A stretch of 64,000 nt of DNA from Macrostomum lignano (lineage: Eukaryota): assembly GCA_002269645.1 (NCBI GenBank), contig NIVC01002336.1, positions 1-64,000 on the forward strand, written 5' to 3'. Under the pieces are notes generated by a model that did not search any database, had not been told where the DNA came from, and saw only the letters and a list, made by a program, of their open reading frames with translations. The stretch's first letter is position 1. The number at the start of each line of letters is the position of its first letter. The position numbers and the translations under genes were made by a program. Below, in pieces: positions 9,768-63,700 of this stretch.

Positions 9768-9802
<35 letters not shown>

Positions 9803-10887: not shown

Positions 10888-10919
10888 GTGAGCAAGACGC
10901 AGGTGCTGGTATTGCTGGG

Positions 10920-11560: not shown

Positions 11561-11670
11561 AAAGGGATGTATAGGATAATATTACATCAATGGAAGCTAT
11601 TCCGTCTCTAAATTTTCTATTAAGTAGTGAGCTTCTTTATTGCTCAGTTTTTTCGGCCAAATCTCGAACA

Positions 11671-12157: not shown

Positions 12158-12703
12158 ATGGAACAACAATCGGAATCTTCCAAATTGCCGAGAAAAATAA
12201 GAGGAAATCACGGCAGCTTTTGCTGCGCTTTTGGCTGCTCAAACAACGCAGCAATGTCTCTGCCCGGAGTGTCCTTCCATACTTTTCCAAAGGACAAGCA
12301 GCTCAGGAACAGGTGGCTGGTAGCGCTGAGACGAAAAAACTTCGAGCCATCGCCATCCACGCAAGTCTGCTCGATTCATTTTGAGCAATCCTGCTTCAAG
12401 GAGCAGTTCGCAGGCTTTCTGCCTACCGTCAGAAGACGCCTGTATCCGAACGCCGTTCCTTCCATCTTCCCGGCGTTCCCTGACCATCTGCAGCCGAAAG
12501 CTGAAAAGAAACGAAAGACTGCCACCGCGGCCGCAGCTCGCGAAATTGATTCCGCTGCATTTTGTCAATCAACAGAGAGCAGCAGCAGCAAGCCGAAAGC
12601 CCCTGTGGCTGGCAGTGAAAAAGATGAGCATCCAAGACCGGACCTCCATGCTAACTGCTTCGATAAGGTGAAGATCTCAAGCGCAGATACAGTAGGCTTC
12701 TAG
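12158..12703 (+). mobile_element. THAP (C2CH zinc finger) ORF; 5' part of a P-element/THAP9-like transposase relic
   Basis: CCAFGC...SFHTFPKD...RWLVALRR...VCSIHF...AVPSIFP is a complete THAP motif set. Possible donors at 12668 and 12692. Confidence 0.88.
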
Positions 12704-16449: not shown

Positions 16450-17455
16450 GAGTGCCACCCTATAACAGTGCCACCCCACAACAGTGCCACCTCACAACAG
16501 TGCCACCTCACAACAGTGCCACCTCACAACAGTGCCACCTCACAACAGTGCCACCTCACAACAATGCCACCCTATAACAGTGCCACCCCACAACAGTGCC
16601 ACCTCACAACAGTGCCACCTCACAACAGTGCCACCTCACAACAGTGCCACCCCACAACAGTGCCACCTCACAACAGTGCCACCTCACAACAGTGCCACCT
16701 CACAACAGTGCCACCTCACAACAGTGCCACCCCACAACAGTGCCACCCCACAACAGTGCCACCTCACAACAGTGCCACCTCACAACAGTGCCACCTCACA
16801 ACAGTGCCACCCCACAACAGTGCCACCCCACAACAGTGCCACCTCACAACAATGCCACCTCACAACAGTGCCACCTCACAACAGTGCCACCCCACAACAG
16901 TGCCACCCCACAACAGTGCCACCTCACAACAGTGCCACCTCACAACAGTGCCACCCCACAACAGTGCCACCTCACAACAGTGCCACCCCACAACAGTGCC
17001 ACCTCACAACAGTGCCACCTCACAACAGTGCCACCCCACAACAGTGCCACCTCACAACAGTGCCACCCCACAACAGTGCCACCTCACAACAGTGCCACCC
17101 CACAACAGTGCCACCTCACAACAGTGACACCTCACAACAATGCCACCTCACAACAGTGCCACCTCACAACAGTGCCACCTCACAACAGTGCCACCTCACA
17201 ACAGTGCCACCTCACAACAGTGCCACCTCACAACAGTGCCACCTCACAACAATGCCACCTCACAACAATGCCACCTCACAACAGTGCCACCTCACAACAG
17301 TGCCACCTCACAACAGTGCCACCTCACAACAGTGCCACCTCACAACAGTGCCACCCCACAACAGTGCCACCTCACAACAGTGCCACCTCACAACAGTGCC
17401 ACCTCACAACAGTGCCACCTCACAACAGTGCCACCCCACAACAGTGCCACCCCAG
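16450..17455. repeat. Minisatellite, 16-bp unit CACAACAGTGCCACCT
   Basis: Direct reading. Confidence 0.98.
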
Positions 17456-25812: not shown

Positions 25813-27964
25813 CGAAATCCACGCCAAGACAACCCGCTCTGCCGGCGGCGACGCCGAGCTGCCGTCCAGCGGTTCGGCGGCAGCGGCGGCTTCCTCCGCC
25901 AGATTCCCCCACGCCTGCGCCGCCTGCCGTCTGGCCTTCAGGGATGGCCGCCAGCTGGAGCGGCACCGACGGCAGCACGCGGCCAGTCGGCTCGCCTGCC
26001 TGCTTTGCCACCAGCGGCTGGGTAGCTCGGTGGAGCTCCGCCTCCACTACGAGACTCTTCACTTGACGCCAGCCGCCACCGCCGCCGCCGCCACCGCCGC
26101 TTCCGTCTCGGCCGTTCCGTCGGAATCTTCGCCAACTGGCGGATGCGGCGAGGTCTACCGCTGCGAGCAGTGCCAGGTGGGCTTCGGCGCCCAGATCCAG
26201 CTGGCGGCCCACATGCGCTCCAACACGCACAAGCGGCTGGCCAGCTGCCGCTGCCCGCTCTGCGGCCTCGCCTGCGCCGGCCCGGAGCACCTGAGGTCGC
26301 ACGCCAAGTCTCATCAGCTGCCGCTCTTCCTGCCGCCGCTGCTGTTGCCGTTCCCGCTGCACCCGCCGCATCCGACGCCATCGTCCATGTCTGCGGCCTC
26401 GCTGGCTGTTCCGCCGCCGCCGCCGCCGCCGCTGCCGCCGCATTCCATCGCTGCCTCGTCGGCCGGATCTCCGCCCACCCACCCGCCGCCGCTGCTCTGC
26501 CACTTCCTGCCTCCGCTGATTCCGTCGCCGCTTACGAAGCCGCCGCCCGGGCCGCCAGTAACATCGGTGGCCGCCGCAGCAGCCGCTGTAGCCGCCGCGG
26601 CAGCTCAGGCCGCTAACGGCACGGCCCCGTCGGCGAAGCCGGCACAGTCAGCAGCGGTCACTCCGGCTGCTTCCATCACGATGGCAACGAGTGCCGCTGC
26701 TGCGACATCCGTAATTACTTCGTCGGTTGGCACCAACAGCAGCTCGTCCGCGGCTGCCAGCGGCGGTAGCAGTGGCGGCGGCGGCGCCGGCAGCGCTGGC
26801 GGCTGCAGTGGAGACGGCGGTAGCGACGCGGGCGGTGGCGGCGGTGGCGGCGGCCAGCAGAACGGCAAGCGGGCGCGGACCCGCATCACGGAGGACCAGC
26901 TACGCGTGCTGAAGGCCAATTTCAATCTGAACAGCTCGCCAAACGATCAGCTGATCGCCCAGATGTCGGGCGACACCGGCCTGCCTGTGAAGGTCATCAA
27001 GCACTGGTTCCGCAACACGCTGTTCAAGGAGCGGCAGCGCTGCAAAGACTCGCCATATAACTTCAGCATCCCGCCGGCTACGCAGCTCAACCTGGAGGAG
27101 TACGAGAAGACCGGCAAGGTGGAGGTGCTCCCCGCCCGGCCCGAGGAGATTGAGCAGCACGTGCGCGTTCAGCTGCACACTCAGGCGCTCGGCGCCGCGA
27201 GGCGAAAGCGTCCGCGGCCGTCCGCTACTTCCGCGGCCGCCGCCGGCGACGAGGTGTCCACTGCTGCCGCTGCTCCAGCAGCCGTTGAAGCTGCCGAAGC
27301 TGCCAGCGGGCGCAAGCGGGCGCGCATTGAACGGCGGCAGCCGACGCCTGCGTCGCAGATTCCTTCGGACAGCAGCTGGCTGCTCGGCTGTCGGACTGCT
27401 GTTGCCGCCGAGGAGGAGGAAGAGAACCCGGAGCTGGACGCTCCGCTCGATCTCAGCACTGCTGGGCAGCAGCAGCAACAGCGGCAGCAACCGCAGACGC
27501 CTGCCGCGGCCGGCTTGCCGAGTCCCCAGCAGGCGGTGGCTCTGCGGCTGCTTTTCGAGCAGCAACAGCAGCTGTTGCGCATCGACGGCGGCGCCCCGTC
27601 CGAGCCGCAGGTTGAATCTGTGGCCGCCGCTCTCGGCCTCCCCGGCCGTCTCATCCGCGCCTGGCTCAGCAACAATGTGAGCAGCGGCGACGCCGGCGGC
27701 GGTGGCCGTGGCCGCGGCTCGTCCACTCAGCGGTCGCCAAGTCCTGCGGCCAGCTGGCTGGGCCTTCCTGGCGGTCGGTGCCGCCTGTGCGCTGGCGAGC
27801 TGCCCGCTGATTCGCCGGCTAGCGAGCACTTGTACACCGAGCGGCACCTGGCTGCCCTGCTGCGGGCTGCCGAGTCCGCGGCGGAGGACGATGGAACCGA
27901 TGACAATGGCAAGACCGTCAGGGAGGTCGCTGCGGAGCCCAGTGCAGAGGCGGAAGCTGTTTAG
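25813..27964 (+). CDS. ZFHX: ZFHX last coding exon (zinc fingers, homeodomain about 26867-27046, degenerate homeodomain, terminal zinc finger)
   Basis: cccgcag|C GAA ATC CAC; [10 protein letters not shown].., CLLCHQRL.., [17 protein letters not shown]; [15 protein letters not shown]...[28 protein letters not shown]; stop TAG at 27962-27964. Confidence 0.94.
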
Positions 27965-27980: not shown

Positions 27981-28022
27981 TGAGTCAGTCAGTCAGTCAG
28001 TCAGTCAGTCAGTCAGTCAGTC

Positions 28023-28054
<32 letters not shown>

Positions 28055-28399
28055 AGTCAGTCAGTCAGTCAGTCAGTCAGTCAGTCAGTCAGTCAGTCAG
28101 TCAGTCAGTCAGTCAGTCAGTCAGTCAGTCAGTCAGTCAGTCAGTCAGTCAGTCAGTCAGTCAGTCAGTCAGTCAGTCAGTCAGTCAGTCAGTCAGTCAG
28201 TCAGTCAGTCAGTCAGTCAGTCAGTCAGTCAGTCAGTCAGTCAGTCAGTCAGTCAGTCAGTCAGTCAGTCAGTCAGTCAGTCAGTCAGTCAGTCAGTCAG
28301 TCAGTCAGTCAGTCAGTCAGTCAGTCAGTCAGTCAGTCAGTCAGTCAGTCAGTCAGTCAGTCAGTCAGTCAGTCAGTCAGTCAGTCAGTCAGTCAGTCA
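27981..28399. repeat. (TCAG)n microsatellite, about 105 copies
   Basis: Direct reading. Confidence 0.99.
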
Positions 28400-29224
28400 G
28401 GGACCCCACAATGCCTCTTGCAGTGGTGAATATTCGCAGCGGCGCAGCTTGCAACACAGCATCCGAGCCAGCCCCATCAGTGACTTGAAGAAGCCGGCAG
28501 CAGTGCTGAAAGCTCACCTCCCCGTTCCCTTCTGTACCACCGGATCTCCACGGCGAACTGTGTTTACAATGTGCAGATTCTGTTTTCACTTACCATAGGC
28601 TGTTCAGCATTTTGTGTTTGGATCTTCGAGACCAGCAAGGGCCCGCGTCTATGATCTGGGATCAACTATTTAGAAAATTTTCTTCCCAAATGCGACTGCT
28701 ATCCCCCCTCATGTGATGCTGGCCTGGCGTGGTCCCAGCTAACTTTATTGACAACAGTTTCCTCTTTTCTCTAGAAGTTTTGGCAATTTTCAGCAGGAAT
28801 ACGAGTATGCAGATAGCTATGCTTAGTAATATTATGTTGCTATAGACTTGCACAGCACCCCTATAGCAATGTTTATCATAACCGTTTCTTTTTTATCATT
28901 TTCTTCAAAGCGCGTAAATTTTTAGAGATTTTCTTTTCTCGCGCAATTTAGCTTAGCTAGTGTTGTTGTCTTTTGTTTGTGCTTTTTCCCGCGTGTGTTT
29001 TGTTTATTCTGCTTGCTTCTTTGTTGTCATTGTTTCTGTCTTGTTTGAGCGTACAATTACTACATGTATGCAGCAATAAACTCATTTTGTAGCCAACGAA
29101 TCTTTTTTATCATATAAATATAACTTTATTAAATCGCAGTGTTGCATCTTGTCTGTTGTTTGAATAGAAGATAAACTAGAAATGCTGCTTATTTGTCTGA
29201 TTAAATATGCTTAGATTTCTTGTA

Positions 29225-38938: not shown

Positions 38939-39067
38939 ATGCCTCAGCCCGACTACTTAGTGGCTTTGCACCTGACCACCTGCGGCAAGCAGGGCGAAGA
39001 GATTGGCACAGATGAGGCGCCAATCTGCCTGATAGCCTACCTCATTCACGATGTGCGGCATAACAAG
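38939..39067 (+). CDS. ESRP: ESRP exon 1
   Basis: MPQPDYLVALHLTTCGKQGEEIGTDEAPICLIAY (family PDYLVV...GSDE.ELI); AAG|gtgagc. Confidence 0.9.
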
Positions 39068-39097: not shown

Positions 39098-40112
39098 CGG
39101 GCGCCACACTGAGGGCAGAACATGGGGGGCGCCACACTGGGGGCAGAACATGGGGGGCCGCCACACTGAGGGCAGAACATGGGGGGCCGCCACACTGAGG
39201 GCAGAACATGGGGGGGGCGCCACACTGAGGGCAGAACATGGGGGGGCGCCACACTGAGGGCAGAACATGGGGGGGGCGCCACACTGAGGGCAGAACATGG
39301 GGGGGGCGCCACACTGAGGGCAGAACATAGGGGGGGGCACACTGAGGGCAGAACATGGGGGGCGCCACACTGAGTGCAGAACATAGGGGGGGCACACTGA
39401 GGGCAGAACATAGGGGGGGGGGCACACTGAGGGCAGAACATGGGGGGGGCGCCACACTGAGGGCAGAACATGGGGGGCGCCACACTGAGGGCAGAACATG
39501 GGGGGGGCGCCACACTGAGGGCAGAACATGGGGGGGGCGCCACACTGAGGGCAGAACATAGGGGGGGCACACTGAGGGCAGAACATGGGGGGCGCCACAC
39601 TGAGTGCAGAACATAGGGGGGGGCACACTGAGGGCAGAACATAGGGGGGGCACACTGAGGGCAGAACATGGGGGGGGGGCGCCACACTGAGGGCAGAACA
39701 TGGGGGGCGCCACACTTGAGGGCAGAACATAGAGGGGGGGGCACACTGAGGGCAGAACATGGGGGGCGCCACACTGAGGGCAGAACATAGGGGGGGGGCA
39801 CACTGAGGGCAGAACATAGGGGGGGCACACTGAGGGCAGAACATGGGGGGCGCCACACTGAGTGCAGAACATAGGGGGGGCACACTGAGGGCAGAACATA
39901 GGGGGGGGCACACTGAGGGCAGAACATGGGGGGGGCGCCACACTGAGGGCAGAACATGGGGGGCGCCACACTTGAGGGCAGAACATAGAGGGGGGGGGCA
40001 CACTGAGGGCAGAACATGGGGGGGCGCCACACTGAGGGCAGAACATAGGGGGGGGGGCACACTGAGGGCAGAACATAGGGGGAGGGGGGCACACTGAGGG
40101 CAGAACATGGGG
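39098..40112. repeat. G-run minisatellite, about 29-32-bp unit GGGGGGCGCCACACTGAGGGCAGAACAT
   Basis: Direct reading; ESRP intron 1. Confidence 0.97.
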
Positions 40113-40244
40113 GCACGTTCAGGCGACCCCCTTCCCACTGGCCCGCTGAAATCCAAGGTTACCGGTGAGTAGGAGCCTTTAATTAGGTCACTATAGTGTT
40201 TTATAGGCGCATTACAATGTACACCTTAATATAAACGATGCCAG

Positions 40245-40418
40245 ATCATCGCGGTCGAGCAGCACCTGGTGAAGCCGCAGGTGAACCCTGGCCAGACTGG
40301 TTCGGACAGCTCCGAGGAGGACGGCTTGGCAACTATTTCTGAGGAGTGCCGGTCGGAGACGGGACTTAGCGCCGACTCGTTCCATTCGGCGAGCTACCTC
40401 GAGTCTGTGCTCGAAGAG
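40245..40418 (+). CDS. ESRP: ESRP exon 2
   Basis: gccag|ATC...GAG|gtgcgc; QHLVKP...ISEECRSETGL...LESVLEE. Confidence 0.88.
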
Positions 40419-40980: not shown

Positions 40981-41218
40981 ATGGACAAGTTCCTGCGAAA
41001 CAAAGGCATCCACCCGGAGTCGGGTGGCAAGACATTCACCCTGGTGCTGGAGGGCCAGCATCCCATGCGGCTGGTGTTCCACCCGGAGACCTGCTCGAAG
41101 AAGATCTCGCTAGAGCAGTTTCCGTATTTCTATTCGTTCTTCGATCTGCGCAAAGAGTTTCTCAAGGGCCGCAATTCCGAGCCTGACACCATTGTGTCGC
41201 TCAAGGACATGCTGGACT
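40981..41218 (+). CDS. ESRP: ESRP exon 3
   Basis: ttgcag|ATG; EGQHPMRLVFHPE...FYSFFDLRKEF; ends at the U12-type donor T|GTATCCTTT. Confidence 0.92.
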
Positions 41219-44200
41219 GTATCCTTTCGAGTGCAAGAACTGGGGACTGGAGGACCTGAGGTAGCACTGGAGGACCTGAAGTAGCACTGGAGGACCTGAG
41301 GTAGCACTGGAGGACCTGAAGTAGCACTGGAGGACCTGGGGTAGCACTGGAGGACCTGAGGTAGCACTGGAGGACCTGAAGTAGCACTGGAGGACCTGAG
41401 GTAGCACTGGAGGACCTGAGGTAGCACTGGAGGACCTGAGGTAGCACTGGAGGACCTGAGGTAGCATTGGAGGACCTGAGGTAGCACTGGAGGACCTGAG
41501 GTAGCATTGAAGGACCTGAGGTAGCATTGAAGGACCTGAGGTAGCATTGGAGGACCTGAGGTAGCATTGAAGGACCTGAGGTAGCACTGGAGGACCTGAG
41601 GTAGCATTGGAGGACCTGAGGTAGCATTGAAGGACCTGAAGTAGCATTGAAGGACCTGAGGTAGCATTGAAGGACCTGAGGTAGCATTGGAGGACCTGAG
41701 GTAGCATTGGAGGACCTGAGGTAGCATTGGAGGACCTGAGGTAGCATTGGAGGACCTGAGGTAGCATTGAAGGACCTGAGGTAGCACTGGAGGACCTGAG
41801 GTAGCACTGGAGGACCTGAGGTAGCACTGGAGGACAAGGGGATAGCACTGGAGGACAAGGGGATAGCACTGGAGGACAAGGGGATAGCACTGGAGGACAA
41901 GGGGATAACACTGGAGGACAAGGGGATAGCACTGGAGGACAAGGGGATAACACTGGAGGACAAGGGGATAGCACTGGAGGACAAGGGGATAGCACTGGAG
42001 GACAAGGGGATAACACTGGAGGACAAGGGGATAGCACTGGAGGACAAGGGGATAGCACTGGAGGACAAGGGGATAGCACTGGAGGACAAGGGGATAACAC
42101 TGGAGGACAAGGGGATAGCACTGGAGGACAAGGGGATAACACTGGAGGACAAGGGGATAGCACTGCAGGACAAGGGGATAACACTGGAGGACAAGGGGAT
42201 AGCACTGGAGGACAAGGGAATAACACTGGAGGACAAGGGGGTAGCACTGGAGGACCTGAGGTAGCACTGGAGGACCTGAGGTAGCACTGGAGGACCTGAG
42301 GTAGCACTGGAGGACCTGAGGTAGCACTGGAGGACCTGAGGTAGCACTGGAGGACAAGGGGATAGCACTGGAGGACAAGGGGATAGCACTGGAGGACAAG
42401 GGGATAGCACTGGAGGACAAGGGGATAGCACTGGAGGACAAGGGGATAGCACTGGAGGACAAGGGGATAGCACTGGAGGACAAGGGGATAGCACTGGAGG
42501 ACAAGGGGATAGCACTGGAGGACAAGGGGATAGCACTGGAGGACAAGGGGATAGCACTGGAGGACAAGGGGATAGCACTGGAGGACAAGGGGATAGCACT
42601 GGAGGACAAGGGGATAGCACTGGAGGACAAGGGGATAGCACTGGAGGATCTGAGGTAGCACTGTAGGGGCAGCAGAGGGCATTCAGATCGTGCAATTTTC
42701 CAAAGCAAAAACTCTGACCCAAGTTTGCCAAAGATTTCATTAGTCTCTGCAGGCCGCGCACAGGGTGTCAGATTGTATTAAAATTCGGCCTTCAAATCGC
42801 AGCAAACGTTCGAAAATTGACCCTTCCAATAGCCCCTGACAAGGCGCCTTGATAGGTGAATGAAGTAAGCCTTAATTACTACTCTTATTCTAATTTGAGT
42901 CGGCATGCGCTCTCGCTGAGCAAGAGACAGCGAGCGATATTAAATTTCTAACCTGAGCAAAATGCCTAGCTTTAACTAGGCCCCCCTAAATTCTTTGCCC
43001 CATAGGCAAGGCAACAGCTGTTTCTGCAACAGCATGCGACTCTCTCTGGCTATCCCGGCTTCCTCTGTGTGCATAAGTATTGTCTCCCTTTGTTTACCGG
43101 GGCCGGGGGGGATTTCCATAAACTGGGAGTTTTGGAAGCGGCAGTGACCGCAGCTGCGCAACCCCCACCTCTATTGTCTCTTCATGCTCAAGCGCCATTT
43201 AGGCCTGTTGAGCAGCTGCAATTGCCTTCAAACTCGGGGATCCCCTCTCTTCCCCGGTGCTGTATAAGCCACTAACTTCTCGACTCAATATTGAAGCCTC
43301 ATCGCGGAATGCCTCAATTCGTGAAATTAGAGAGAGAGATAAGTCAGTGCCGAGTGTCGATCTCCTGGGAGTCTCGATCTCATTACCGCCGTATTTGACT
43401 TCAGCGCTGGATTGCGTCAGCCAGTGTCTATTCGTAACAAAGTAGGATTTTTTGGGAAAATTCCCAGCGGTCGGATCTTATATTTGAGAACTATAGGTAA
43501 TAAAAAATGTTTGTCCAACCCACCGAAGCCGCGGGAGAGCTCAGGTCCGGGAGAGACGATCAGCAGAGGTTAGAGAGGAGTAAGGGGGAGAGTAGCGCAA
43601 CTGTGCACACGAAAACAACAGCCAGTTTTAATTTCCCTCCTGAGAAGTGAATTATCGATCGATTTTTGGGAGTCAGGCGGAGAGTCAGAGCGGAACCAGA
43701 TCGATTTTTGCTTCGAAAGCAGAATCCGTGTTGCACGCGGGCGAGCACGCACAGGAGAAGTGTACAAGCGTACATTGTTTTAGCCGGTCGTTTGAGTCTT
43801 AATAACTCACCATTTGAGAATGGCTTTCACGATCAGTGCGCGGTGTAGAAAGGTGCTCAACAGCAGCTGCTGCCTTGAGCTCCCGAGTTTAATCCTCATT
43901 AAACCCCCACCCCCCCCCCCGAAGAACCCCGGGCCAGCTAAGGGAAGCACAGTGGGATTTATTCTGGATCTTGGAAATTTTCCCTTCTCCTTCCACCCCC
44001 ACGCTTGCAGCTGTTGCCTGGCCCGGGGGGGGGCTGGCTCAAGAAAAATAAAAAGAATAATTTTATAGCCAGTTTAAAATCTTCTCAAGCTGTGTCTCAA
44101 CTCCACTTATACTATACTATACAACTCGCAAGAGTGGGTCAAGACAAGACTGTAAAAGGAATGTTGCAATTGTTGGTCTTCTGGGTGGCAAGGGGAGCCG

Positions 44201-44299
44201 GAGTTGGGAACTGGGTGGGTGGGTGGGATTTGAATAGCGTTTGACCTTGTTGTTCCTTCCTTAACTCGACTTGCCCAAACTGGGCGGCCAATCAATTAG
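41219..44299 (+). other. U12-type (minor spliceosome) GT-AG intron
   Basis: 5' splice site GTATCCTTT; branch site TTCCTTAAC at 44257-44265; no polypyrimidine tract before the AG at 44298-44299; the frame is restored by this splice. Confidence 0.85.
41245..42662. repeat. Composite minisatellite of alternating blocks: 20-bp GTAGCACTGGAGGACCTGAG and 21-bp GATAGCACTGGAGGACAAGGG
   Basis: Direct reading; starts about 25 nt into the U12 intron. Confidence 0.97.
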
Positions 44300-44389
44300 C
44301 GCTGGAAATGCAGTTCGACAACTCGCCGGACTATGGCACCCGACAGTGCATCGCCATGTCCCGCGTCATCAGCAGATTGTTGAACGATG
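44300..44389 (+). CDS. ESRP: ESRP exon 4
   Basis: ttag|CG CTG GAA...GAT G|gtgagt; SLEMQFDNSPDYGTRQCIAMSRVISRLLNDG. Confidence 0.85.
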
Positions 44390-44412: not shown

Positions 44413-45268
44413 ATCTCAGATCCCAATGGGCAGTTTGGGATAAAAATCCCAATCTCAGATCCCAATGGGTAGTTTGGGATAAAAATCCCATATCTCAGAT
44501 CCCAATGGGTAGTTTGGGATAAAAATCCCATATCTCAGATCCCAATGGTTTAGTTTGGGATAAAAATCCCATATCTCAGATCCCAATGGGTAGTTTGGGA
44601 TAAAAATCCCATATCTCAGATCCTAATGGTTTAGTTTGGGATAAAAATCCCATATCTCAGATCCCAATGGTTTAGTTTGGGATAAAAATTCATATCTCAG
44701 ACCCCAATGGTTTAGTTTGGGATAAAAATCCCATATCTCAGACCCCAATGGTTTAGTTTGGGATAAAAATCCCATATCTCCTATCCCAATGGTTTAGTTT
44801 GGGATAAAAATCCCATATCTCAGATCCCAATGGTTTTGTTTGGGATAAAAATCCCATATCTCAGACCCCAGTGGTTTAGTTTCGGATAAATATCCCATAT
44901 CTCAGATCCCAATGGTTTAGTTTGGGATAAATATCCCATATCTCAGATCCCAATGGTTTAGTTTGGGATAAAAATCCCATATCTCAGATCCCAATGGTTT
45001 AGTTTGGGATAAAAATCCCATATCTCAGATCCCAATGGTTTAGTTTGGGATAAAAATCCCATATCTCAGATCCAATGGTTTAGTTTGGGATAAAAATCCC
45101 ATATCTCAAATCCCAATGGGTAGTTTGGGATAAAAATCTCATATCTCAGATCCAATGGGTAGTTTGGGATAAAAATCCCATATCTCAGATCCCAATGGTT
45201 TAGTTTGGGATAAAAATCCCATATCTCAGATCCCAATGGTTTAGTTTCAGATAAATATCCCATATCTC
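44413..45268. repeat. Minisatellite, 40/41-bp unit ATATCTCAGATCCCAATGGTTTAGTTTGGGATAAAAATCCC
   Basis: Direct reading. Confidence 0.97.
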
Positions 45269-45442: not shown

Positions 45443-45497
45443 GTCACACCTTCAAGGAACCGGAGAAAGTGAACCAGTTTTACTATCCTGCCATTGT
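45443..45497 (+). CDS. ESRP: ESRP exon 5 (55 nt)
   Basis: cacgcag|GT CAC...ATT GT|gtaagt; GHTFKEPEKVNQ (family H.F..PE.VN). Confidence 0.88.
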
Positions 45498-47659: not shown

Positions 47660-49070
47660 TATGTCCCATACCCCTGTGCCCTCCCACCCACCGGCCCTCC
47701 CATACCCCCTGTGCACTCCCACCCCCCGGCCCTCCCATACCCCCTGTGCACTCCCATACCCCGGCCCTCCCATACCCCTGTGCCCTCCCACCCCCGGCCC
47801 TCCCATACCCCCTGTGCACTCCCATACCCCCTGTGCACTCCCATACCCCGGCCCTCCCATACCCCTGTGCCCTCCCATCTCCCCGGCCCTCCCATACCCC
47901 TGTGCCCTCCCATCCCCCGGCCCTCCCATACTCCCTGTGCACTCCCATACCCCGGCCCTCCATACCCCTGTGCCCTCCCATCCCCCCGGCCCTCCCATAC
48001 TCCCTGTGCACTCCCACCCCCCGGCCCTCCCATACCCCTGTGCCCTCCCATCCCCCGGCCCTCCCATACCCCTGTGCCCTCCCATCCCCCGGCCCTCCCA
48101 TACTCCCTGTGCACTCCCATACCCCCTGTGCACTCCCATACCCCGGCCCTCCCATACCCCTGTGCCCTCCCATCCCCCGGCCCTCCCATACCCCTGTGCC
48201 CTCCCATCCCCCCGGCCCTCCCATACTCCCTGTGCACTCCCATACCCCCTGTGCACTCCCATACCCCGGCCCTCCCATACCCCTGTGCCCTCCCATCCCC
48301 CGGCCCTCCCATACCCCTGTGCCCTCCCATCCCCCCGGCCCTCCCATACTCCCTGTGCACTCCCATACCCCCTGTGCACTCCCATACCCCGGCCCTCCCA
48401 TACCCCTGTGCCCTCCCATCCCCCGGCCCTCCCATACTCCCTGTGCACTCCCATACCCCCTGTGCACTCCCATACCCCTATGCCCTCCCATCCCCCGGCC
48501 CTCCCATACCCCTGTGCCTTCCCATACCCCCTGTGCCCTCCCCATGCACCTTTGTGCCCTTCCCATACCCCCTGTGCCTTCCCCATACACCTCTGTGCCC
48601 TCCCCATACCCCCCTGTGCCCTCCCCATGCACCTCTGTGCCCTCCCCTTACCCCCCTGTTCCCTCCCCATACACCTCTGTGCCCTCCCCATACCCCCATG
48701 TGCCTTCCCCATACACCTCTGTGCCCTCCCCATACCCCCCTGTGCCCTCCCCATACACCTCTGTGCCCTCCCCATACCCCCCTGTGCCTTCCCCATACAC
48801 CTCTGTGCCCTCCCCATACCCCCATGTGCCTTCCCCATACACCTCTGTGCCCTCCCCATACCCCCCTGTGCCTTCCCCATACACCTCTGTGCCCTCCCCA
48901 TACCCCCCTGTGCCTTCCCCATACACCTCTGTGCCCTCCCCATACCCCCTGTGCCTTCCCCATACACCTCTGTGCCCTCCCCATACCCCCCTGTGCCTTC
49001 CCCATACACCTCTGTGCCCTCCCCATACCCCCCTGTGCCTTCCCCATACACCTCTGTGCCCTCCCCATAC
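47660..49070. repeat. C-rich composite minisatellite (CCCATACCCCTGTGCCCT / CCGGCCCT units)
   Basis: Direct reading. Confidence 0.96.
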
Positions 49071-50857
49071 ATTAATAATAAATTAATAATCGATTGAAGT
49101 CTATGCAGACAAAAGCACTCTGCGGTGCCTCAAACGGCGACTGTGTGAACAGCGTTGCAGCGTGTTTCACTGACCAGACTTGAATATCTCTTTTTATATA
49201 GAATTTCAAATCTAATTTCGTTAGCGCGGATGAGTCGTTTTAAAAGGTTTTTTAACCCCCCCCCGCCATTATCCTTGCTAATAAAATATGAGCTACTCTT
49301 ATAGATTGCGCTGAATATATGCCTGTAGATAAATAATATTCCTAATCAATTTTTATTTACTCTTCTAATTTTTCACCCAATTGCGAAGCGACTCGTACAT
49401 AAATGCAACAGTTTTTCCCATTGCGCTACAGAAGCAGAAAAATTCTCTTTTTGGTGTCTTTTTTCCGTGTTCCTCCGCACAAGTCTGAAGCTTTTACCAA
49501 AAACAATTCTATAGCCAAATTAGCCAAATGCTTCAAGTTTCAGGTGTGTAGCAAAATTCACTTTATCTGCCGGGTTGTGTTTTTGAGTTGGGGAAGAGCA
49601 GCGCGTAGGGCAGGCCAGGTTAGCTTGCCTCCTCACAGTTCCATTGGGGAAGATAAGGAACTGCGACCGGTGTCTATGCGACTGACCGGCTGTGTTGGTG
49701 CAGCTGCGGGGGCTGCACTGCGGCACATGCTGTGCTCCCACTGCCTGCCGCACACTGCGCTGCAGCCCCCGCCCCTCCCCCCAGTTCGGGTAAGACACAC
49801 GTGCCCCCAGCTGTCCTTCCAGCCTTCATTCAATAAGTGATCTGTGTCTTAGCCTGCTGAAAAATCGATATAAAAGCTAAAATCGACCAGCTGATTATCG
49901 AAGCAGATTTTGTGGGGCTGGTTGGTGAACGCAGCGAGTGGGTGTGCGGAGCAACAGCGGGGGAGTTAAGCTCGTTTTTTTCTTTCCCTCTCCTCTTTTC
50001 AAATTTTCACTACTCAATAATGACAGTAGTAGGATAGGAATATTGTCTGTGCATGGGAGAAATGATAAATGCCCACTCGTAACACCATTTTTTAGCTGCG
50101 TTGATGAAGCGAATTAAGCATCGAATTACTGTGGACTCTGAGAGTTGATCAAGTGTGAGTCAATCACGGAATCTGAGTAGGGCCCCGACTGCCTCTGTTA
50201 AGTACAAGTGCTCTTCTGATAGATCCTCCGGGAATGCAGCTCATTAATCCAACTGTGGCAGTGTGCAACTTTTGGCTCTAAGGGAAATAACATCAATTTT
50301 TCGGGTGTCTGCAGTTTTTTATCCTCGGTTGCTGGCTCGACAATTGAAGGCAGAAGAGGGGCCGCTGGCCGCTGCTTGGCAACGGGACTGTTTTAGCCAA
50401 GGATCACTAGAAATGGGATAGACTGGACTGTTTGTTTCTAGGAAAGGTTTTGAAGGCTCGCGTTTTATAAGAAATGCATTGGCAAAGTTGGGAACTTCGA
50501 TTTTAGGTGAAAAAATGATGTTTTATTCGAAATCATAAATTAAAAAAATAAAGATTTTCAAAAATCTTAACTTACTGTTTTTAATAAATTTGAAAGTCCC
50601 GATCTCGGCAATGCAAGCCTTTAAATTTTTTCCCTAGAAACGAGTTGTCTCGTCTAAAATCTGGTGGTCCTTGTGTTTTTGGCTGTTATAAAACTATTTT
50701 TTAGACTGAAATTGGTGTTGAATATTCCAGCATCCTGCTTGCATCATTCGAAAGTTTTATTTATCTGTCTAAACAGTGCAAAAACTGTAAACTGTATTGT
50801 ATGCAACGGTTTGGCTTGTCTGTTGATTCAAGCTAAGCCGCACAATGTCGCTGACGC

Positions 50858-52226: not shown

Positions 52227-52649
52227 CTGGACTTCTTTCGCAAGGCCGAGTGCCCTGTGCAGTTCGACTCCGAAGGGGTGCTGTTCGTCAACCACAAGGA
52301 CGGCCGCGCCACCGGAGACGCCTTCGTGATATTCGAGAACGAAATCCTGGCGGAGCGGGCACTGCAGAATCACAGGCAGCACATTGGCAACAGGTACATC
52401 GAGCTGTTCAAGTCCACGCCAGCTGAGGTCAACCAGGTGCTGTGCAGCTTCAAGAACCCGCAGCAGGCGGAGAACGGGCACGACAATCCGGCCAACGCGC
52501 CCGGCCTGCTGCCCTTCACTCCGCTGTCGCTGCTGCAGCCGCCAAATTTCTCCAAGATGTTCATCCGCGTCCGCGGCATGCCCGTCGACGCCAGCGTCGC
52601 CGACATTCTCAACTTTTTGGAGGGCCATTCGCAGAATATTGTCTTCCAG
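52227..52649 (+). CDS. ESRP: ESRP exon 7 (RRM2 and start of RRM3)
   Basis: tttttcag|CTG; DGRATGDAFVIF...RYIELFKST...IRVRGMP; CAG|gtgagt. Confidence 0.95.
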
Positions 52650-52674: not shown

Positions 52675-53895
52675 GTCCTGGGTCCTGGGTTCGAATTCCA
52701 TTAAGGTTCTGAGTTCGAATTTCATCAAGGTCCTGGGTTCGAATTCCGTTGAGGTCCTCAGTTTAAATTCCATTGAGATCCTGGTTTTAAATTTCATAGA
52801 GGTCCTGGGTTCGAATTCCATCAAGGTCCTGGGTTCAAATTCCATTAAGGTTCTGAGTTCGAATTCCACTGAGGTCCGAGCTCGAATTCCATCAAGGTCC
52901 TGGGTTCGATTTCATTTGAGGTCCTGAGTTGGAATTTCATCAAGATCCTGGGTTCGAATTCATTTGAGGTCCTGAGTTCGAATTTCATCAAGATCCTGGG
53001 TTCAAATTCCACTGAGGTCCTGAGTTCGAATTCAATCGAGGTCCTGAGTTCGAATTCGATTAAGGTTCTGAGTTCGAATTCCATCAAGATGCTAGGGTTC
53101 AAATTCCACTGAGGTCCTGTGTTCGAATTCAATCGAGGTCCTGGGTTCGAATTCGATTAAGGTTCTGAGTTCGAATTCCATCAAGATCCTGGATTCAAAT
53201 TCCACTGAGGTCCTGAGTTCGAATTCAATCGAGGTCCTGGGTTCGAATTCGATTAAGGTTCTGAGTTCGAATTCCATCAAGATCCTGGATTCAAATTCCA
53301 CTGAGGTCCTGAGTTCGAATTCAATCGAGGTCCTGAGTTCGAATTCGATTTAGGTTCTGAGTTCGAATTCCATCAAGATGCTAGGGTTCAAATTCCACTG
53401 AGGTCCTGTGTTCGAATTCAATCGAGGTCCTGGGTTCGAATTCGATTAAGGTTCTGAGTTCGAATTCCATCAAGATCCTGGATTCAAATTCCACTGAGGT
53501 CCTGAGTTCGAATTCAATCGAGGTCCTGAGTTCGAATTCGATTTAGGTTCTGAGTTCGAATTCCATCAAGATGCTAGGGTTCAAGTTCCACTGAGGTCCT
53601 GTGTTCGAATTCAATCGAGGTCCTGGGTTCGAATTCGATTAAGGTTCTGAGTTCGAATTCCATCAAGATCCTGGATTCAAATTCCACTGAGGTCCTGTGT
53701 TCGAATTCAATCGAGGTCCTGGTTTCGAATTCCACTGAGGTCTTGGTTTTGAATTCCATTGAGATCCTGGTTTTGAATTTCATAGAGGTCATGGAGTTTG
53801 AATTTAATTGAGGTCCTAGGTTCGAATTCAATCGAGGTCCTGGGTTCGATTTGTCCGTTGTTAGTGAATTAGAGTGAAAACCTGGGTTCGAATTT
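52675..53895. repeat. Minisatellite, about 21-bp units GAGGTCCTGRGTTCGAATTCCAT with higher-order repeats
   Basis: Direct reading. Confidence 0.94.
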
Positions 53896-53983: not shown

Positions 53984-54697
53984 GGAGTTCACCTGGTGTA
54001 CAATCACATCGGCCAGCCGGCAGGCGAGGCCATCATCCAGATGAGCTCCGAGCTGGCCGCACACATGGCCTGCGAGGCCAAGAACCGCAAGCTGTTCTAC
54101 CTGCCAACCGGCAAGCGCTCCCAGGTAGAGGTCAGCCAGTGCGCGCCGCACGAGGTGCCAACTAATCTCGGCCTTGGCCCCGGCGCTCTCGGCAGTCCGC
54201 CGTCAGCGGCCACCGCCGCCGCAGCCGCCGCGGCAGCCGCGATGCAACAGCAGATGCAGCAGGCGGCCAGCCAGCCCGGCCTGTTCCACCGGCCGCTGCT
54301 CAGCCCCGCCATGTCGGCCGGCACCCTGCTGCCCGTCAGCCAGCCGCACCATCCGGCCACCGGCTTCACCCACCCGCAGCCGATGTTCCACAGTCCGCAG
54401 GCGCCGCCACCGCCGCCGCCGCTGCCGCTAATCCCGGTGTCGCGTCCAGGCGCCATCCAGTTTCCTCACGTGACCCTGCCGTCGCCCATCTCGGCGCCGA
54501 GCCTGCTGGCCAACACGCTGATGGCCTATCCGTACGCGCCGTCGCCGCAGCAGCAGCCGCCGATGCAGCCGGGCTCGTTCATGTACCAGCCCGGCATGCT
54601 CAACACGATGAACACCATCATAGCCAAGGGCCTGCCTAAGGACATCGACTTTCACGAGATTCTGCGCCTGTTCGAGTCCATCTTCGCTTCCAATCCC
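53984..54697 (+). CDS. ESRP: ESRP exon 8 (end of RRM3, Pro/Ala/Gln-rich linker, start of RRM4)
   Basis: cgcag|GGA GTT CAC; GVHLVYN..GQPAGEAIIQM; IIAKGLP; CCC|gtgagt. Confidence 0.93.
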
Positions 54698-54711: not shown

Positions 54712-55258
54712 CGTTTGCACGCATCTATCAAATTGCATACCCTATTTGCACGCATCTATCAAATTGCACACCCTATTTGCACGCATCTTTCAATTTGCAC
54801 AACCTATCTGCACGCATCTATTAAACTTCACACCCTATTTGCACGCATCTATCAAATTGCACACCCTATTTGCACGCATCTTTCAATTTGCACAACCTAT
54901 CTGCACGCATCTATTAAACTTCACACCCTATTTGCACGCATCTATCAAACTGCACACCCTATTTGCACGCATCTTTCAATTTGCACAACCTATCTGCACG
55001 CATCTATTAAACTTCACACCCTATCTGCACGCATCTATCCATTTGCACTTTATTTGCACCATCTATCAAATTGCACACTTTATTTGCACGCATCTATCAA
55101 ATTGCACACTTTATTTGCACGCATCTATCAAGTTGCACACTTTATTTGCACGCATCTATCAAACTGCACACCCTATTTGCACGCATCTATCAAATTGCAC
55201 CCTATTTGTACGCATCTATTCATTTGCACAACCTATTTGCACGCATTTATATGCTTGC
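54712..55258. repeat. Minisatellite, 31-bp unit TGCACGCATCTATCAAATTGCACACCCTATT filling ESRP intron 8
   Basis: Direct reading. Confidence 0.95.
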
Positions 55259-55281: not shown

Positions 55282-55458
55282 CAAACCATTCCGGACATCA
55301 AGATCGCCATCGGTCCTGACGGCCTCCCATCTGGTGAGGCATTCGTCAGCTTCTCCTCGCGCCACGAGGCGGAGCGCGCGGTGAACGAGTGCAACCGGCA
55401 GCAGGTTCGGCAGCACTGCGTTGAGCTCATGATGGCCCAGCCGGTCATGGCCGTCTGA
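55282..55458 (+). CDS. ESRP: ESRP exon 9 (end of RRM4, stop)
   Basis: cccgcag|CAA; DGLPSGEAFVSF...AERAV...VELM; TGA at 55456-55458. Confidence 0.92.
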   Translation, partial: QTIPDIKIAIGPDGLPSGEAFVSFSSRHEAERAVNECNRQQVRQHCVELMMAQPVMAV

Positions 55459-59413: not shown

Positions 59414-59710
59414 TCAAGGCTGGTCATTGGGCTCCTGAACAACCAACAGCAGGTAGTCCGGGGAGGGCGCCACCATGATCTCGTTCTTTTTGGAGCGGAT
59501 TCGTAGGAAGGTCAAATCGTTGCCGGGGTCAAGGTCGCGCACGGCCGACTTTGCCTTCTGAGCCAGCTGCTGAATCAGCGCGCAGTACTGCACGGTGACG
59601 TCATTCTCGGCGAATGAACTCCGGATTGGAATGCCGTCGTAGCTCACAATAATGGCGCCGATCACACCCTTGTGCGACAGGATGCGCTTGAAGGTTTCCT
59701 CGACTTCAGC
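59414..59710 (-). CDS. DYNLRB: Dynein light chain roadblock type; main coding exon (initiator ATG not in this exon)
   Basis: atttcag|GCT GAA GTC: [18 protein letters not shown]...DGIPIRS...[34 protein letters not shown]...*; 98 aa plus stop. Confidence 0.96.
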
Positions 59711-60500: not shown

Positions 60501-62551
60501 CTGTAAATTAGAAATCTTGGACACCATTAAATCAGTCCATAAAAAATAAGCCAAAGGTGTTATCCATCTGCTAAAAATTTAAATATAAAATAACTATAGG
60601 CTTTAATTATTTCATCATTTGATAATCACATTGAACTGCTGGGGTCCATTTAAGTATGATTTTATAAAACAGATGCTATGCTGGTTAAGGTTGTTGAAAT
60701 AGTATGTATAATAAAATATAAAGTTTTAGAATATCTTTATCATAAATGTAAATAGGCTTTGCAACAAAAAAATAAATTATTTTCTGCAATGCAAAAAGCA
60801 AAGTATTCAGCATTTTCTATGAATTTTATCTGTTTATGACACGATTGCTTGAAATGATTTCTATACATGTTGATGTGCCTCAGAAAACTAGCACTCTTTT
60901 GTAAATATATCTTTATAAACTGTTTTAAATTATGCAAATAAATTATAAAAACAAATAAGAAACACGTAAAGACAGAATTTTTCTTTGAATACTTCATTTA
61001 CATTCGAAATTTCAAATATGAACACCCAACGGCCAACGGGGTGCTTTGACATGACATATTCTGATGAAAAAATGTTGACATAGTTTCGATGTTGTATTCT
61101 GGTAATAACCATTGGTGTTAAGACTTTTAAATCGTTTAATGCAGTGTTTTCTCACAATATCAATACAAAAAGTATTGTTTGTTTCAGCGGTTGGTTAGGC
61201 TAAGTAGTTTTTATTTAATTATCAAATACTTCTTTGTTATAATACCTGCAACTTCAATTATCATTTTATAACTCAAAATAGCGTATTTCGTGGGAAAACA
61301 CAAGTTTTTAAAGGATCTGGGATGTAAAATTTGGATTACAACGATAAAGAGGTAGCTCAGAAAACGCTCTACTACTTTTAATTGTCTTTAGACTTTTGTT
61401 AAACTTTTAATCTTCTGTAATCGAACGTTTTTGGCTGTAATACTTCCCTGTATAGTTAGAAAAATACATTCGTTTTTCTTGTTCGCATTCAACTTCAAAT
61501 TTGATGGCATCTAATGCATTTAGTTTCCTAATCATAACATTGAATTAACACTATTGGTTAATCTCTGAGTCCTATATCTGCATTCTGGAGCTACATCTAC
61601 ATTCAGTGGCTTTTTGGTCAATTTTTGTTGACTTTAATAAACTTTAGAATACATGTATGTATATTAGTGCAGATGTATATTTTCTGTTAAATATTTGCAT
61701 TAAAATTTCGCTAATGACTCCTTTATCTGTTTTGAGTGTTTTCAATAATTATCTACATGTAGATATAATACGCATAATCCACGGATAGAACTACATGTAA
61801 TAACTATAAATACGTATTTATCTACCGAGTTATCACACAGCTATCCGCTTTCCAGTCCAACTAATTCCCTAATTAGTTTTGATCACGCGAGGAAATGAAC
61901 TTGTTTTTCACACACGAAATTGTCTAATCGGCGGAAAACTTTGTGCCAACATAAAGCTAGAAGCAGGCACATTTTGTCTAAAAAAACAATAATTAAACAA
62001 CCAATAAACAAATATCTTTTCGCTCATAGTTTGATACAATCAAATTATTAACAATAATAATTTTTTTACAACAGATTAGCACAATTCGCCAAAGCGGGTG
62101 GGCGGGTATTTTCTGGATTGAGGTGGACTATGCAGTTAGCGAGGGGGTTGAAAATGCCCCTCCCGGCCCTCCAGGTTCCATTGGCGGCGTTCAGATTAGC
62201 GTCGCAATAATACAGGCTAATTGCAGACACGGGGTGCTGCGGTAGGTTGCCGCAGGTTAGCCTGTTTTTAGCATAAGCGTGTGTGTGGGCGTCGAACTAT
62301 ATGGTGTTGGCTCGCTTTGGCTTGTTTGGGTGTAAAGCTGCTAATTGCCGCACCTGTTTATGTACGTGTTGGTTCTACTTTTTCAGGCAGGTAGACCAAG
62401 ATCGCATTTGCAGGCCGCAATCCCAGCGGATGCAAAATAGCGCACCCTGTGACACTGAACGTTTTATGGTTGACACAATGATGCAGCTGCTGGGAGTTGA
62501 ATTCAGAATCTGGCTGAAGAGAGGATTTGCAGTAAAGGGTCAGAAATTGAT

Positions 62552-63700
62552 TAGGAGAGGGGATCAGGGAGATTAGGAGAGGGGATCAGAGAGATTGGGA
62601 GAGGGGATCAGAGAGATTGTGAGAGGGGATCAGAGAGATTGGGAGAGGGGATCAGAGAGATTGGGAGAGGGGATCAGGGAGATTAGGAGAGGGGATCAGA
62701 GAGATTGGGAGAGGGGATCAGGGAGATTAGGAGAGGGGATCAGAGAGATTGGGAGAGGGGATCAGGGAGATTAGGAGAGGGGATCAAAGAGATTGGGAGA
62801 GGGGATCAGAAAGATTGGGAGAAGGGGATCAGAAAGATTAGGAGATGGGATCGGAGAGATTAGGAGAGGGGATCAAAGAGATTGGGAGAGGGGATCAGAG
62901 AAATTGGGAGAGGGGATCGGAGAGATTAGGAGAGGGGATCAAAGAGATTGGGAGAGGGGATCAGGGAGATTAGGAGAGGGGATCAGAGAAATTGGGAGAG
63001 GGGATCGGAGAGATTAGGAGAAGGGATCCGAAAGATTGGGAGAAGGGGATTAGAGAGACTAGGAGAGGGGATCAAAAAGATGGAGAGAAGGAGATCAGAG
63101 ATAGATTAGGAGAGGGGATCAGAGAGATTGGGGGAGGGGATCAGAGAGATTGGGAGAGGGCATCGGAGAGACTAGGAGAGGGGATCGGAGAGATTGGGGA
63201 GGGGATCAGAGTGATTTGGAGAGGGGATCAGGGAGATTGGGGAGGGGATCAGAGTGATTTGGAGAGGGGATCAGGGAGATTGGGGAGGGGATCAGAGAAA
63301 TTGGGAGAGGGGATCGGAGAGATTAGGAGAAGGGATCCGAAAGATAGGGAGAAGGAGATCAGAGATAGATTAGGAGAGGGGATCAGAGAGATTGGGGGAG
63401 GGGATCAGAGAGATTGGGGGAGGGGATCAGAGAGATTGGGAGAGGGCATCGGAGAGACTAGGAGAGGGGATCAGCGAGATATTAGGAAAGAGGATCAGAG
63501 AGATTGGGAGAGGGGATCAGAGATAGATTAGGAGAGGGGATCAGAGAGATTGGGAGAGGGGATCGGAGAGATTGGGGAGGGGATCAGAGTGATTTGGAGA
63601 GGGGATCAGGGAGATTGGGGAGGGGATCAGAGTGATTGGGAGAGGGGATCGGAGAAACTAGGAAAGGGATCGGAGAGATTTAGAGACGGGATCAGAGGAA
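62552..63700. repeat. Purine-rich minisatellite, 22-bp unit GGGAGAGGGGATCAGAGAGATT
   Basis: Direct reading. Confidence 0.96.

What the first reader, a model, noticed from the sequence alone, without database searches (positions are those of the whole stretch)
41219..44299. U12-type minor-spliceosome intron in the ESRP splicing-regulator gene
Seen: exon 3 ends at T|GTATCCTTT, the exact U12 donor consensus. TTCCTTAAC at 44257-44265 is the exact U12 branch consensus, about 35 nt before an AG that lacks a polypyrimidine tract, and only this splice keeps the frame (MLD-S-LEMQ). Known: U12 introns are rare, often rate-limiting, and the minor spliceosome has been lost in several animal lineages such as C. 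elegans. Inference: this genome retains a working minor spliceosome, and a master alternative-splicing regulator depends on it across a 3.1-kb intron containing a 1.4-kb minisatellite.
Basis: partly seen in the sequence, partly recalled or inferred. Interest (0 to 1): 0.75.

Follow-up and report, generated by a model that had tools for sequence, protein, structure and literature searches.

The report
Conserved minor-spliceosome intron in ESRP gene
The third coding intron of this animal's ESRP (epithelial splicing regulator) gene carries perfect minor-spliceosome (U12-type) signals, but the same intron is already catalogued in human and mouse ESRP1, so it is a retained ancient feature, not a discovery.

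Summary
GTATCCTTT sits at 41219-41227 and TTCCTTAAC at 44257-44265. Each is the only copy of its consensus in 128 kb of both strands, and joint placement by chance is about 7e-9. Splicing 41218 to 44300 yields an uninterrupted 798-aa, nine-exon ESRP protein. It matches the solved human ESRP1 N-terminal structure (7WRN, E=2.8e-65).

ESRP1 is a listed minor-intron gene: human AGT|GTATCCTTT, mouse AAA|GTATCCTTT (Olthof 2019). The human exon tail fits the same codon and phase as here. Metagenomic animal contigs carry this intron at the same codon and phase: U12-type in at least three taxa, U2-type in five.

Three corrections apply:
- Two other GT-AG pairs also keep the frame.
- The weak pyrimidine tract does not discriminate in this gene.
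- The 35-nt branch-to-3' splice site spacing is abnormal. The reported working range is 10-20 nt, and the orthologues here show 12-20 nt.

A 17-nt hairpin between branch site and acceptor might compensate, but it is not statistically significant. No RNA data, organism identity or snRNA genes could be obtained. Interest is low.

The parts
38939..39067 (+). ESRP coding exon 1 (ATG at 38939; donor AAG|GTGAGC)
   Evidence: matches 7WRN ESRP1 from residue 3
40245..40418 (+). ESRP coding exon 2 (donor GAG|GTGCGC)
40981..41218 (+). ESRP coding exon 3, ending ...GAC T (Asp plus the first base of a split Ser codon)
   Evidence: contains FYSFFDLRKEF, which is invariant with human ESRP1
41219..41227 (+). 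U12-type 5' splice site GTATCCTTT, an exact match to RTATCCTTT
   Evidence: only 4/9 match to the U1-type consensus, against 6-9/9 for the other seven introns
41219..44299 (+). Intron 3: 3081 nt, GT-AG, phase 1, U12-type
41246..42667 (+). 21-bp minisatellite (69 copies) inside the intron, starting 27 nt after the 5' splice site
   Evidence: similar arrays occur in nearly every other intron of the gene
44257..44265 (+). U12-type branch-point sequence TTCCTTAAC, an exact match to TTCCTTRAY; candidate branch A at 44263 or 44264
44271..44287 (+). Predicted 7-bp hairpin (UUGCCCA-AAC-UGGGCGG) between branch site and acceptor
   Evidence: -8.3 kcal/mol, z = -1.54, 16 of 200 shuffles fold as well. Not significant; a role is hypothetical.
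44298..44299 (+). 3' splice site AG, the first AG after the branch site, 35 nt from the branch A
   Evidence: exon 4 starts with the split codon followed by Leu, as in all orthologues
44300..44389 (+). ESRP coding exon 4 ((S)LEMQFDNSPDYGTRQCIAMSRVISRLLND; donor ATG|GTGAGT)
45443..45468 (+). 26-nt microexon encoding (G)HTFKEPEK, needed to restore the frame between exons 4 and 6
   Evidence: aligns with human NHRFSDPER; separate exon also in L026 and L032
46672..47097 (+). ESRP coding exon 6 (RRM1)
52227..52649 (+). ESRP coding exon 7 (RRM2 and start of RRM3)
53984..54697 (+). ESRP coding exon 8 (rest of RRM3, Pro/Gln-rich region, start of C-terminal RRM)
55282..55458 (+). ESRP coding exon 9 (C-terminal RRM, stop codon included)

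Best explanation
Intron 3 (41219-44299) of an ESRP/Fusilli-family gene is a GT-AG U12-type intron. It is the orthologue of the minor intron already catalogued in human and mouse ESRP1.

Inferred mechanism, from established knowledge of the minor spliceosome:
- The U11/U12 di-snRNP binds GUAUCCUUU and UUCCUUAAC cooperatively.
- U4atac/U6atac.U5 then joins.
- The first AG downstream of the branch site (44298-44299) is used as acceptor.
- Exon 3 is joined to exon 4 in phase 1 (GAC T|CG CTG).

The position is ancient. It splits the same codon in vertebrates and in several uncultured animals. Some lineages have converted it to U2-type.

Shown here: the motifs, their uniqueness, the intact reading frame, and the positional and phase conservation.

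Inferred: actual use of the minor spliceosome, and tolerance of the unusual 35-nt branch-to-acceptor spacing, perhaps helped by a hairpin that would shorten it to about 18 nt.
For: - Exact 9/9 5' splice site and 9/9 branch consensus. Each is the sole copy in the window, on the right strand and at the right place. Joint chance is about 7e-9.
- The splice gives a stop-free 798-aa, nine-exon ORF with RRM domains. It matches PDB 7WRN ESRP1 residues 4-310 at E=2.8e-65, ungapped across the junction.
- This is the only intron of eight with a poor U1-type donor, 4/9 against 6-9/9.
- Olthof 2019 supplement: human ESRP1 minor intron AGT|GTATCCTTT with branch GTTTCCTTAATT; mouse AAA|GTATCCTTT with branch GTTTCCTTAACT. 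The human tail (G)AG T fits Glu-Tyr164, the residues aligned to the window's Asp-Ser181.
- Other papers also name ESRP1 as a U12 gene.
- Metagenomic ESRP loci have an intron at the same codon and phase. It carries U12 signals in L026, L048/L053 and L063, and a U12-type donor in L078. U12-type branch sites lie before the same exon in L041, L045 and L068.
- Phase 1 fits the known bias of U12 introns against phase 0.
Against: - The branch A to 3' splice site distance is 35 nt. Reviews give 10-20 nt as the working range and 11-13 nt as the optimum. The orthologues found here show 12-20 nt.
- There are no RNA-seq, lariat or junction data for this organism.
- No minor-spliceosome snRNA lies in the window, which is uninformative for 64 kb. 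The organism could not be identified.
- The exact codon of the human intron rests on a 3-nt exon tail plus protein alignment, not on a genomic alignment. A pairwise MAFFT alignment placed the junction 4 residues away. HMMER and the multi-species comparison agree on the Tyr position.
Confidence: 0.87

Rival explanations
1. The junction 41218/44300 is real but is made by the major (U2) spliceosome. On this view the U12 motifs are relics of an intron that has converted, or is converting, to U2-type.
For: - The 35-nt branch-to-acceptor spacing is typical of U2-type introns (18-40 nt) and atypical of U12-type.
- TTAAC can also serve as a U2-type branch sequence.
- The same intron position is U2-type in five metagenomic orthologues: L016, L049, L071, L032 and L067. 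Conversion therefore happens in this gene.
Against: - The donor ACT|GTATCC matches the U1-type consensus at only 4/9 positions, the worst in the gene.
- Both U12 motifs are perfect 9-mers, which is not expected of decaying relics.
- The converted orthologues all show clear GTAAGT or GTGAGT donors, unlike this one.
Confidence: 0.07
2. The locus is a twintron, as reported for human ESRP1. The U12-type donor at 41219 competes with a U2-type donor 12 nt downstream (CGA|GTGCAA at 41231) for the same acceptor. The second isoform would carry four extra residues (MLDCILSTLEMQ).
For: - The pair 41231/44299 is GT-AG and keeps the frame.
- Human ESRP1 is listed among 18 U12/U2 twintrons.
Against: - GTGCAA is a weak donor.
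- No orthologue or cDNA-like contig shows an insertion at this point.
- No transcript data exist.
- The human U2 variant is reported in only 3 of 6 species.
Confidence: 0.04
3. The two motifs are there by chance and the exon-intron structure is different.
For: Each 9-mer on its own is expected about 1-2.6 times in a window of this size.
Against: - Joint placement at the frame-keeping donor and just upstream of the homologous acceptor has a probability of about 7e-9.
- The same position carries the same motifs in independent taxa and in human and mouse.
- The alternative frame-keeping pairs have poor signals and would delete or insert conserved residues.
Confidence: 0.01

Closest known systems
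The minor (U12-type) intron of vertebrate ESRP1, listed in U12DB/MIDB-type catalogues (Olthof et al. 2019, PMC6717393; Janice et al. 2013, PMC3564746)
   Same: - Same gene family and the same N-terminal DEDDh-like domain.
- GT-AG subtype with an identical 9-nt donor GTATCCTTT.
- Near-identical branch sequence: the 10-mer TTCCTTAACT is shared with mouse.
- Phase 1.
- The exon tail is compatible with the same codon: human Glu-Tyr164 against window Asp-Ser181.
- Long intron: 16 kb in human, 12 kb in mouse, 3.1 kb here.
   Different: - A different, unidentified and probably invertebrate organism.
- Branch-to-acceptor spacing here is 35 nt; the vertebrate value was not available to me.
- Janice et al. 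scored the fly state as 'intron deletion' by comparing with Glo, which is an hnRNP F/H-type gene, not the ESRP orthologue. The invertebrate state of this intron was therefore not actually assessed there.
Generic GT-AG U12-type introns (consensus RTATCCTTT ... TTCCTTRAY; U12DB, intronIC)
   Same: - Exact consensus at both sites.
- Branch motif inside intronIC's -55 to -5 search window.
- Not phase 0.
- Sits in an RNA-processing gene, a functional class enriched for U12 introns.
   Different: Spacing of 35 nt against the usual 10-20 nt.
[quoted passage not shown]
   Same: Same codon position and phase. L032 even has the same exon end, GAC T|.
   Different: Those have GTAAGT, GTGAGT, GTAAAG or GTAGTT donors, so they are converted to the major class.
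Human ESRP1 U12/U2 twintron (Janice et al. 2013)
   Same: A frame-keeping GT lies 12 nt downstream of the U12 donor.
   Different: That GT is weak and nothing shows it is used. The human U2 variant truncates the protein to 206 aa, whereas this one would add 4 aa.

Membership tests
U12-type (minor-spliceosome) intron, GT-AG subtype | 5' splice site matching RTATCCTTT at +1 to +9 | tested here: met
   GTATCCTTT at 41219-41227, the only match in the window
U12-type (minor-spliceosome) intron, GT-AG subtype | Branch-point sequence matching TTCCTTRAY near the 3' end (intronIC searches -55 to -5) | tested here: met
   TTCCTTAAC at 44257-44265, which is -43 to -35; the only match in the window
U12-type (minor-spliceosome) intron, GT-AG subtype | Short branch-to-3' splice site distance (10-20 nt, optimum 11-13). 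This is a functional constraint measured in mammalian systems. It is not a criterion in the U12DB or intronIC classifiers. | tested here: not met
   35 nt against 10-20 nt in reviews and 12-20 nt in the orthologues. I still file the intron as U12-type, because the classifiers' two defining motifs are perfect and the orthologues are U12-type. The spacing is flagged as anomalous.
U12-type (minor-spliceosome) intron, GT-AG subtype | Terminal dinucleotides GT-AG or AT-AC, with the first AG after the branch site used as acceptor | tested here: met
   GT at 41219-41220 and AG at 44298-44299, with no AG between 44266 and 44297
U12-type (minor-spliceosome) intron, GT-AG subtype | No distinct polypyrimidine tract | tested here: inconclusive
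   The pyrimidine fraction is 0.47, but U2-type introns 1, 2 and 5 of the same gene are 0.47-0.53, so the feature does not discriminate here.
U12-type (minor-spliceosome) intron, GT-AG subtype | Orthologous introns in other species are U12-type | tested here: met
   Human and mouse ESRP1; metagenomic loci L026, L048/L053, L063 and L078, plus the 3' halves in L041, L045 and L068
U12-type (minor-spliceosome) intron, GT-AG subtype | Excision depends on U11, U12, U4atac and U6atac snRNPs, and these components are present in the genome | not testable with these tools
   There is no transcript data and only 64 kb of the genome. Rfam found no snRNA in the window.
ESRP / Fusilli family of splicing regulators | N-terminal DEDDh-exonuclease-like domain followed by three hnRNP F/H-type RRMs | tested here: met
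   PDB 7WRN ESRP1 1-310 at E=2.8e-65; ESRP1 RRM2 (7VKI, 2DHA) and RRM3 (7VKJ, 2RVJ) also match; Pfam RRM_1
U12/U2 twintron | Competing U2-type splice sites at the same intron that are actually used | tested here: inconclusive
   A weak frame-keeping GT lies at 41231. There are no transcript data, and no orthologue shows the insertion.

The most novel reading that the evidence does not exclude
In this lineage the minor spliceosome splices across a 35-nt branch-to-acceptor gap, roughly twice the accepted limit. One possibility is that the 17-nt hairpin at 44271-44287 brings the acceptor back to about 18 nt, giving structure-assisted 3' splice site selection for a U12 intron. The other is that the intron is caught midway through U12-to-U2 conversion, with a 3' half already at U2-type spacing.
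Probability: 0.15. Interest if true: 0.45.

Novelty: new member of a known kind. Interest (0 to 1): 0.22.

Why it matters
The finding adds one more species to a known case. The ESRP minor intron is ancient: it splits the same codon in vertebrates, in this animal and in several uncultured animals, and it has been converted to U2-type in others. That makes ESRP a useful marker gene for tracing retention or loss of minor splicing across animals. It also corrects an older comparison that scored the insect state using the wrong orthologue, Glo. The only feature a specialist might want to test is the 35-nt branch-to-acceptor spacing. The link between 'master splicing regulator' and 'minor spliceosome' is already noted in the vertebrate literature.

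Tried and rejected
- **Protein homologue search.** The search for homologous proteins with the junction peptide found nothing, so that database holds no animal ESRP.
- **Contig look-ups.** The look-up of encoding contigs refuses spliced proteins. A contiguous THAP-domain ORF is not on record. The organism was therefore not identified. PDB comparisons of the roadblock and SNF8 proteins did not separate arthropod from vertebrate affinity.
- **Rfam.** The gathering-threshold scan of the window found no RNA family.
- **Insect and fly U12 literature.** None of it mentions fusilli/CG8205. The supplements of two U12 database papers hold no ESRP entry.
- **Exon 4 to exon 6 join.** A direct join fails on phase. 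I first suspected an assembly indel, given the frameshift in the SNF8 copy. I rejected that in favour of a 26-nt microexon that restores the frame and aligns with human NHRFSDPER.
- **Pairwise MAFFT alignment with human.** It put the junction 4 residues off. I rejected it because HMMER and some 20 orthologues agree on the Tyr position.
- **Hairpin between branch site and acceptor.** It is not significant against shuffles (z = -0.42 for 61 nt, -1.54 for 34 nt), so it is kept only as a hypothesis.
- **A nearer branch site or a non-AG acceptor.** Neither exists. An AC acceptor at 44270 runs into a stop.
- **L078.** The 3' end of its intron could not be resolved.

Full report
**What is at the coordinates.** Exon sequence ...ATG CTG GAC T is followed at 41219-41227 by GTATCCTTT. 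TTCCTTAAC lies at 44257-44265, and the next AG is at 44298-44299, followed by CG CTG GAA ATG CAG. The intron is 3081 nt. It holds a 21-bp minisatellite at 41246-42667 with 69 copies. U12DB gives the consensus as RTATCCTTT for the donor and TTCCTTRAY for the branch site. Both are matched exactly.

**Is it more than chance?** RTATCCTTT occurs once in the window on both strands (1.02 expected) and TTCCTTRAY occurs once (2.62 expected). The shorter cores are also rare: RTATCCTT is found 1 time against 4.07 expected, and TCCTTRAY 2 times against 10.6. The single copies fall at the frame-keeping donor base and inside the last 55 nt of the intron. The joint probability is about 7e-9.

**Gene model.** A remembered human ESRP1 sequence, used only as a lead, located the exons by tblastn. 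Exons 1 to 4 end in phase 1, whereas the next large exon starts in phase 0. A 26-nt microexon at 45443-45468, encoding (G)HTFKEPEK, resolves this. The nine-exon model gives a stop-free 798-aa protein. It has RRM domains. It matches PDB 7WRN, ESRP1 residues 4-310, at E=2.8e-65, and also matches the ESRP1 RRM2 and RRM3 structures. In that alignment the junction is ungapped: window kdmldSlemq against human atmteYlnfe. The microexon aligns with human NHRFSDPER.

The other seven introns start GTGAGC, GTGCGC, GTGAGT, GTGAAC, GTAAGT, GTGAGT and GTGAGT. Their matches to MAG|GTRAGT are 6-9 of 9. Intron 3 scores 4 of 9.

**Alternatives at the junction.** I enumerated every GT/GC-AG and AT-AC pair that keeps the frame. 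Three GT-AG pairs qualify:
- 41194/44313, which has a weak donor and deletes conserved residues.
- 41219/44299, the U12 candidate.
- 41231/44299, with donor CGA|GTGCAA, which adds four residues.

So 'only this splice keeps the frame' is overstated, but the candidate is the only pair with credible signals. The pyrimidine content before the acceptor (0.47) is no lower than in several U2-type introns of this gene. The 'lacks a polypyrimidine tract' argument therefore carries little weight here.

**Related sequences.** The protein database held no animal ESRP. A scan of metagenome contigs with a window-plus-human alignment returned 80 ESRP loci from unidentified animals.

The cDNA-like contigs L001-L011 read straight through the junction, for example ..DMINYLCIEAD...

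Genomic contigs have an intron in the same codon and phase, after DML[D/E/K/N], with a split codon followed by Leu. It is U12-type in the following loci:

| Locus | Donor context | Branch motif | Branch A to acceptor |
|---|---|---|---|
| L026 | GAA T\|GTATCCTTTG | TCCTTGAC | 13 nt |
| L048 = L053 | AAC T\|GTATCCTTTC | GCCTTAAC | 20 nt |
| L063 | AAC T\|GTATCTTTT | TCCTTAAT | 17 nt |
| L078 | TCC T\|GTATCCTTTC | not resolved | not resolved |

L041, L045 and L068 contain only the 3' half. They show TGCCTTGAC, TTCCTTGAC and TTCCTTGAC about 12-16 nt before the same exon.

The same position is U2-type in five loci:
- L016: T|GTAAGT
- L049: T|GTAAGT
- L071: C|GTAAAG
- L032: GAC T|GTGAGT
- L067: G|GTAGTT

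The position is therefore old and widespread, the ancestral state is plausibly U12-type, and conversion to U2-type has happened repeatedly. These orthologues also fix the acceptor in the window, because exon 4 begins with the split codon and then Leu in every case.

**Literature.** ESRP1 is a recognised minor-intron gene.
- Janice et al. 2013 list it among human U12/U2 twintrons, with the U12 intron present in 35 of 36 vertebrates from human to Xenopus.
- Doggett et al. 2018 and two papers on Zrsr1/2 mutant mice name it as a U12 gene.
- The Olthof et al. 2019 supplement gives human AGT|GTATCCTTT with branch GTTTCCTTAATT (chr8:94646283-94662271, 15,989 nt). For mouse it gives AAA|GTATCCTTT with branch GTTTCCTTAACT (12,107 nt).

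The human exon tail (G)AG T is what Glu-Tyr164 predicts in phase 1. Those are the residues aligned to the window's Asp-Ser181. The 206-aa U2 variant reported by Janice et al. is consistent with a junction at residue 164. This codon-level assignment is an inference from a 3-nt tail plus protein alignment. I could not align the genomic sequences.

The fly comparison in Janice et al. used Glo, not the ESRP orthologue. The lists of 19 Drosophila U12 introns do not mention fusilli.

**The one oddity.** The branch A lies 35 nt from the acceptor. Reviews give 10-20 nt, with an optimum of 11-13. One insect paper says 12-15. The orthologues here show 12-20. The motif is inside intronIC's -55 to -5 window, so a classifier would still call the intron U12-type.

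No AG and no better branch motif lies in between. A 7-bp hairpin at 44271-44287 (-8.3 kcal/mol) would shorten the path to about 18 nt. It is not significant against shuffles (z = -1.54, 16 of 200 fold as well). I record it as a hypothesis only. The same spacing is normal for U2-type introns. That is the main argument for the rival view that the intron is being, or has been, taken over by the major spliceosome. The donor argues strongly against that view.

**Verdict.** This is a U12-type GT-AG intron in an ESRP orthologue, and its perfect signals imply a functioning minor spliceosome in this genome.

It is not new in kind. It is the orthologue of a catalogued vertebrate minor intron. The minisatellite is a general property of this locus, because almost every intron of the gene has one. 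Actual minor-spliceosome dependence, the organism's identity and the meaning of the 35-nt spacing remain untested.

Noticed in passing
window 45443-45468: A 26-nt microexon encoding (G)HTFKEPEK is required to keep the ESRP frame. It aligns with human NHRFSDPER and is also a separate small exon in metagenomic orthologues (L026 4861-4899, L032 6001-6051).
   Followed up: partly
window 4034-4779 (frameshift near 4309-4313): An intronless SNF8/VPS22 (ESCRT-II) coding sequence matches human SNF8 (2ZME, E=5.5e-73) only after one base is added in the GGG run of ATGCTCGGGTTGG. It is either a processed pseudogene or a homopolymer error in the assembly.
   Followed up: partly
window, whole; e.g. 1272-2526, 12906-15060, 16451-17451, 27983-28400, 39099-40113, 44413-45268, 47664-49071, 52681-53849, 54714-55250, 62549-63697: Minisatellites with 15-45-bp units and tens of copies fill nearly every intron and intergenic stretch. 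Seven of the eight ESRP introns carry one. A 2.1-kb (CTCTC)n array and a 0.4-kb (AGTC)n array are also present.
   Followed up: no
window, both strands: The U12 core motifs are under-represented against dinucleotide-preserving shuffles: RTATCCTT 1 found against 4.07 expected, TCCTTRAY 2 found against 10.6 expected. This may reflect selection against decoy sites or merely the repeat-rich composition.
   Followed up: no
L016, L032, L049, L067, L071 versus L026, L048/L053, L063, L078: Among uncultured animals' ESRP genes, the same intron position and phase is U2-type in five loci and U12-type in at least three taxa (four if the L078 donor is counted). This gives a small natural series of U12-to-U2 conversions. 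L063 has a variant donor, GTATCTTTT.
   Followed up: partly
window 8875-11574 and 26030-27964 (+): Large ORFs encode C2H2 zinc fingers and a homeodomain with long Gln, Ala and Pro runs, probably exons of a zinc-finger-homeobox (zfh/ZFHX-like) gene. A THAP-domain ORF lies at 12158-12703 between them.
   Followed up: no
window 59414-59700 (-): A dynein light chain roadblock/LC7 gene. Its main exon starts after ...TATTTCAG and encodes [16 protein letters not shown].... The tiny first exon was not located.
   Followed up: partly
window 54600-54697 and 55282-55458 (protein residues 717-787): This ESRP ends in a canonical fourth RRM. It gives the protein's best-scoring RRM_1 stretch (RRM_1 6e-21 for the whole protein). 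From memory only, human ESRP1 keeps just a remnant of one at its C-terminus.
   Followed up: no
window 41246-42667: Each 21-bp repeat unit inside the U12 intron contains GAG|GTAGCA, a weak U2-type donor-like sequence. About 69 decoy donors therefore follow the real U12 donor.
   Followed up: no
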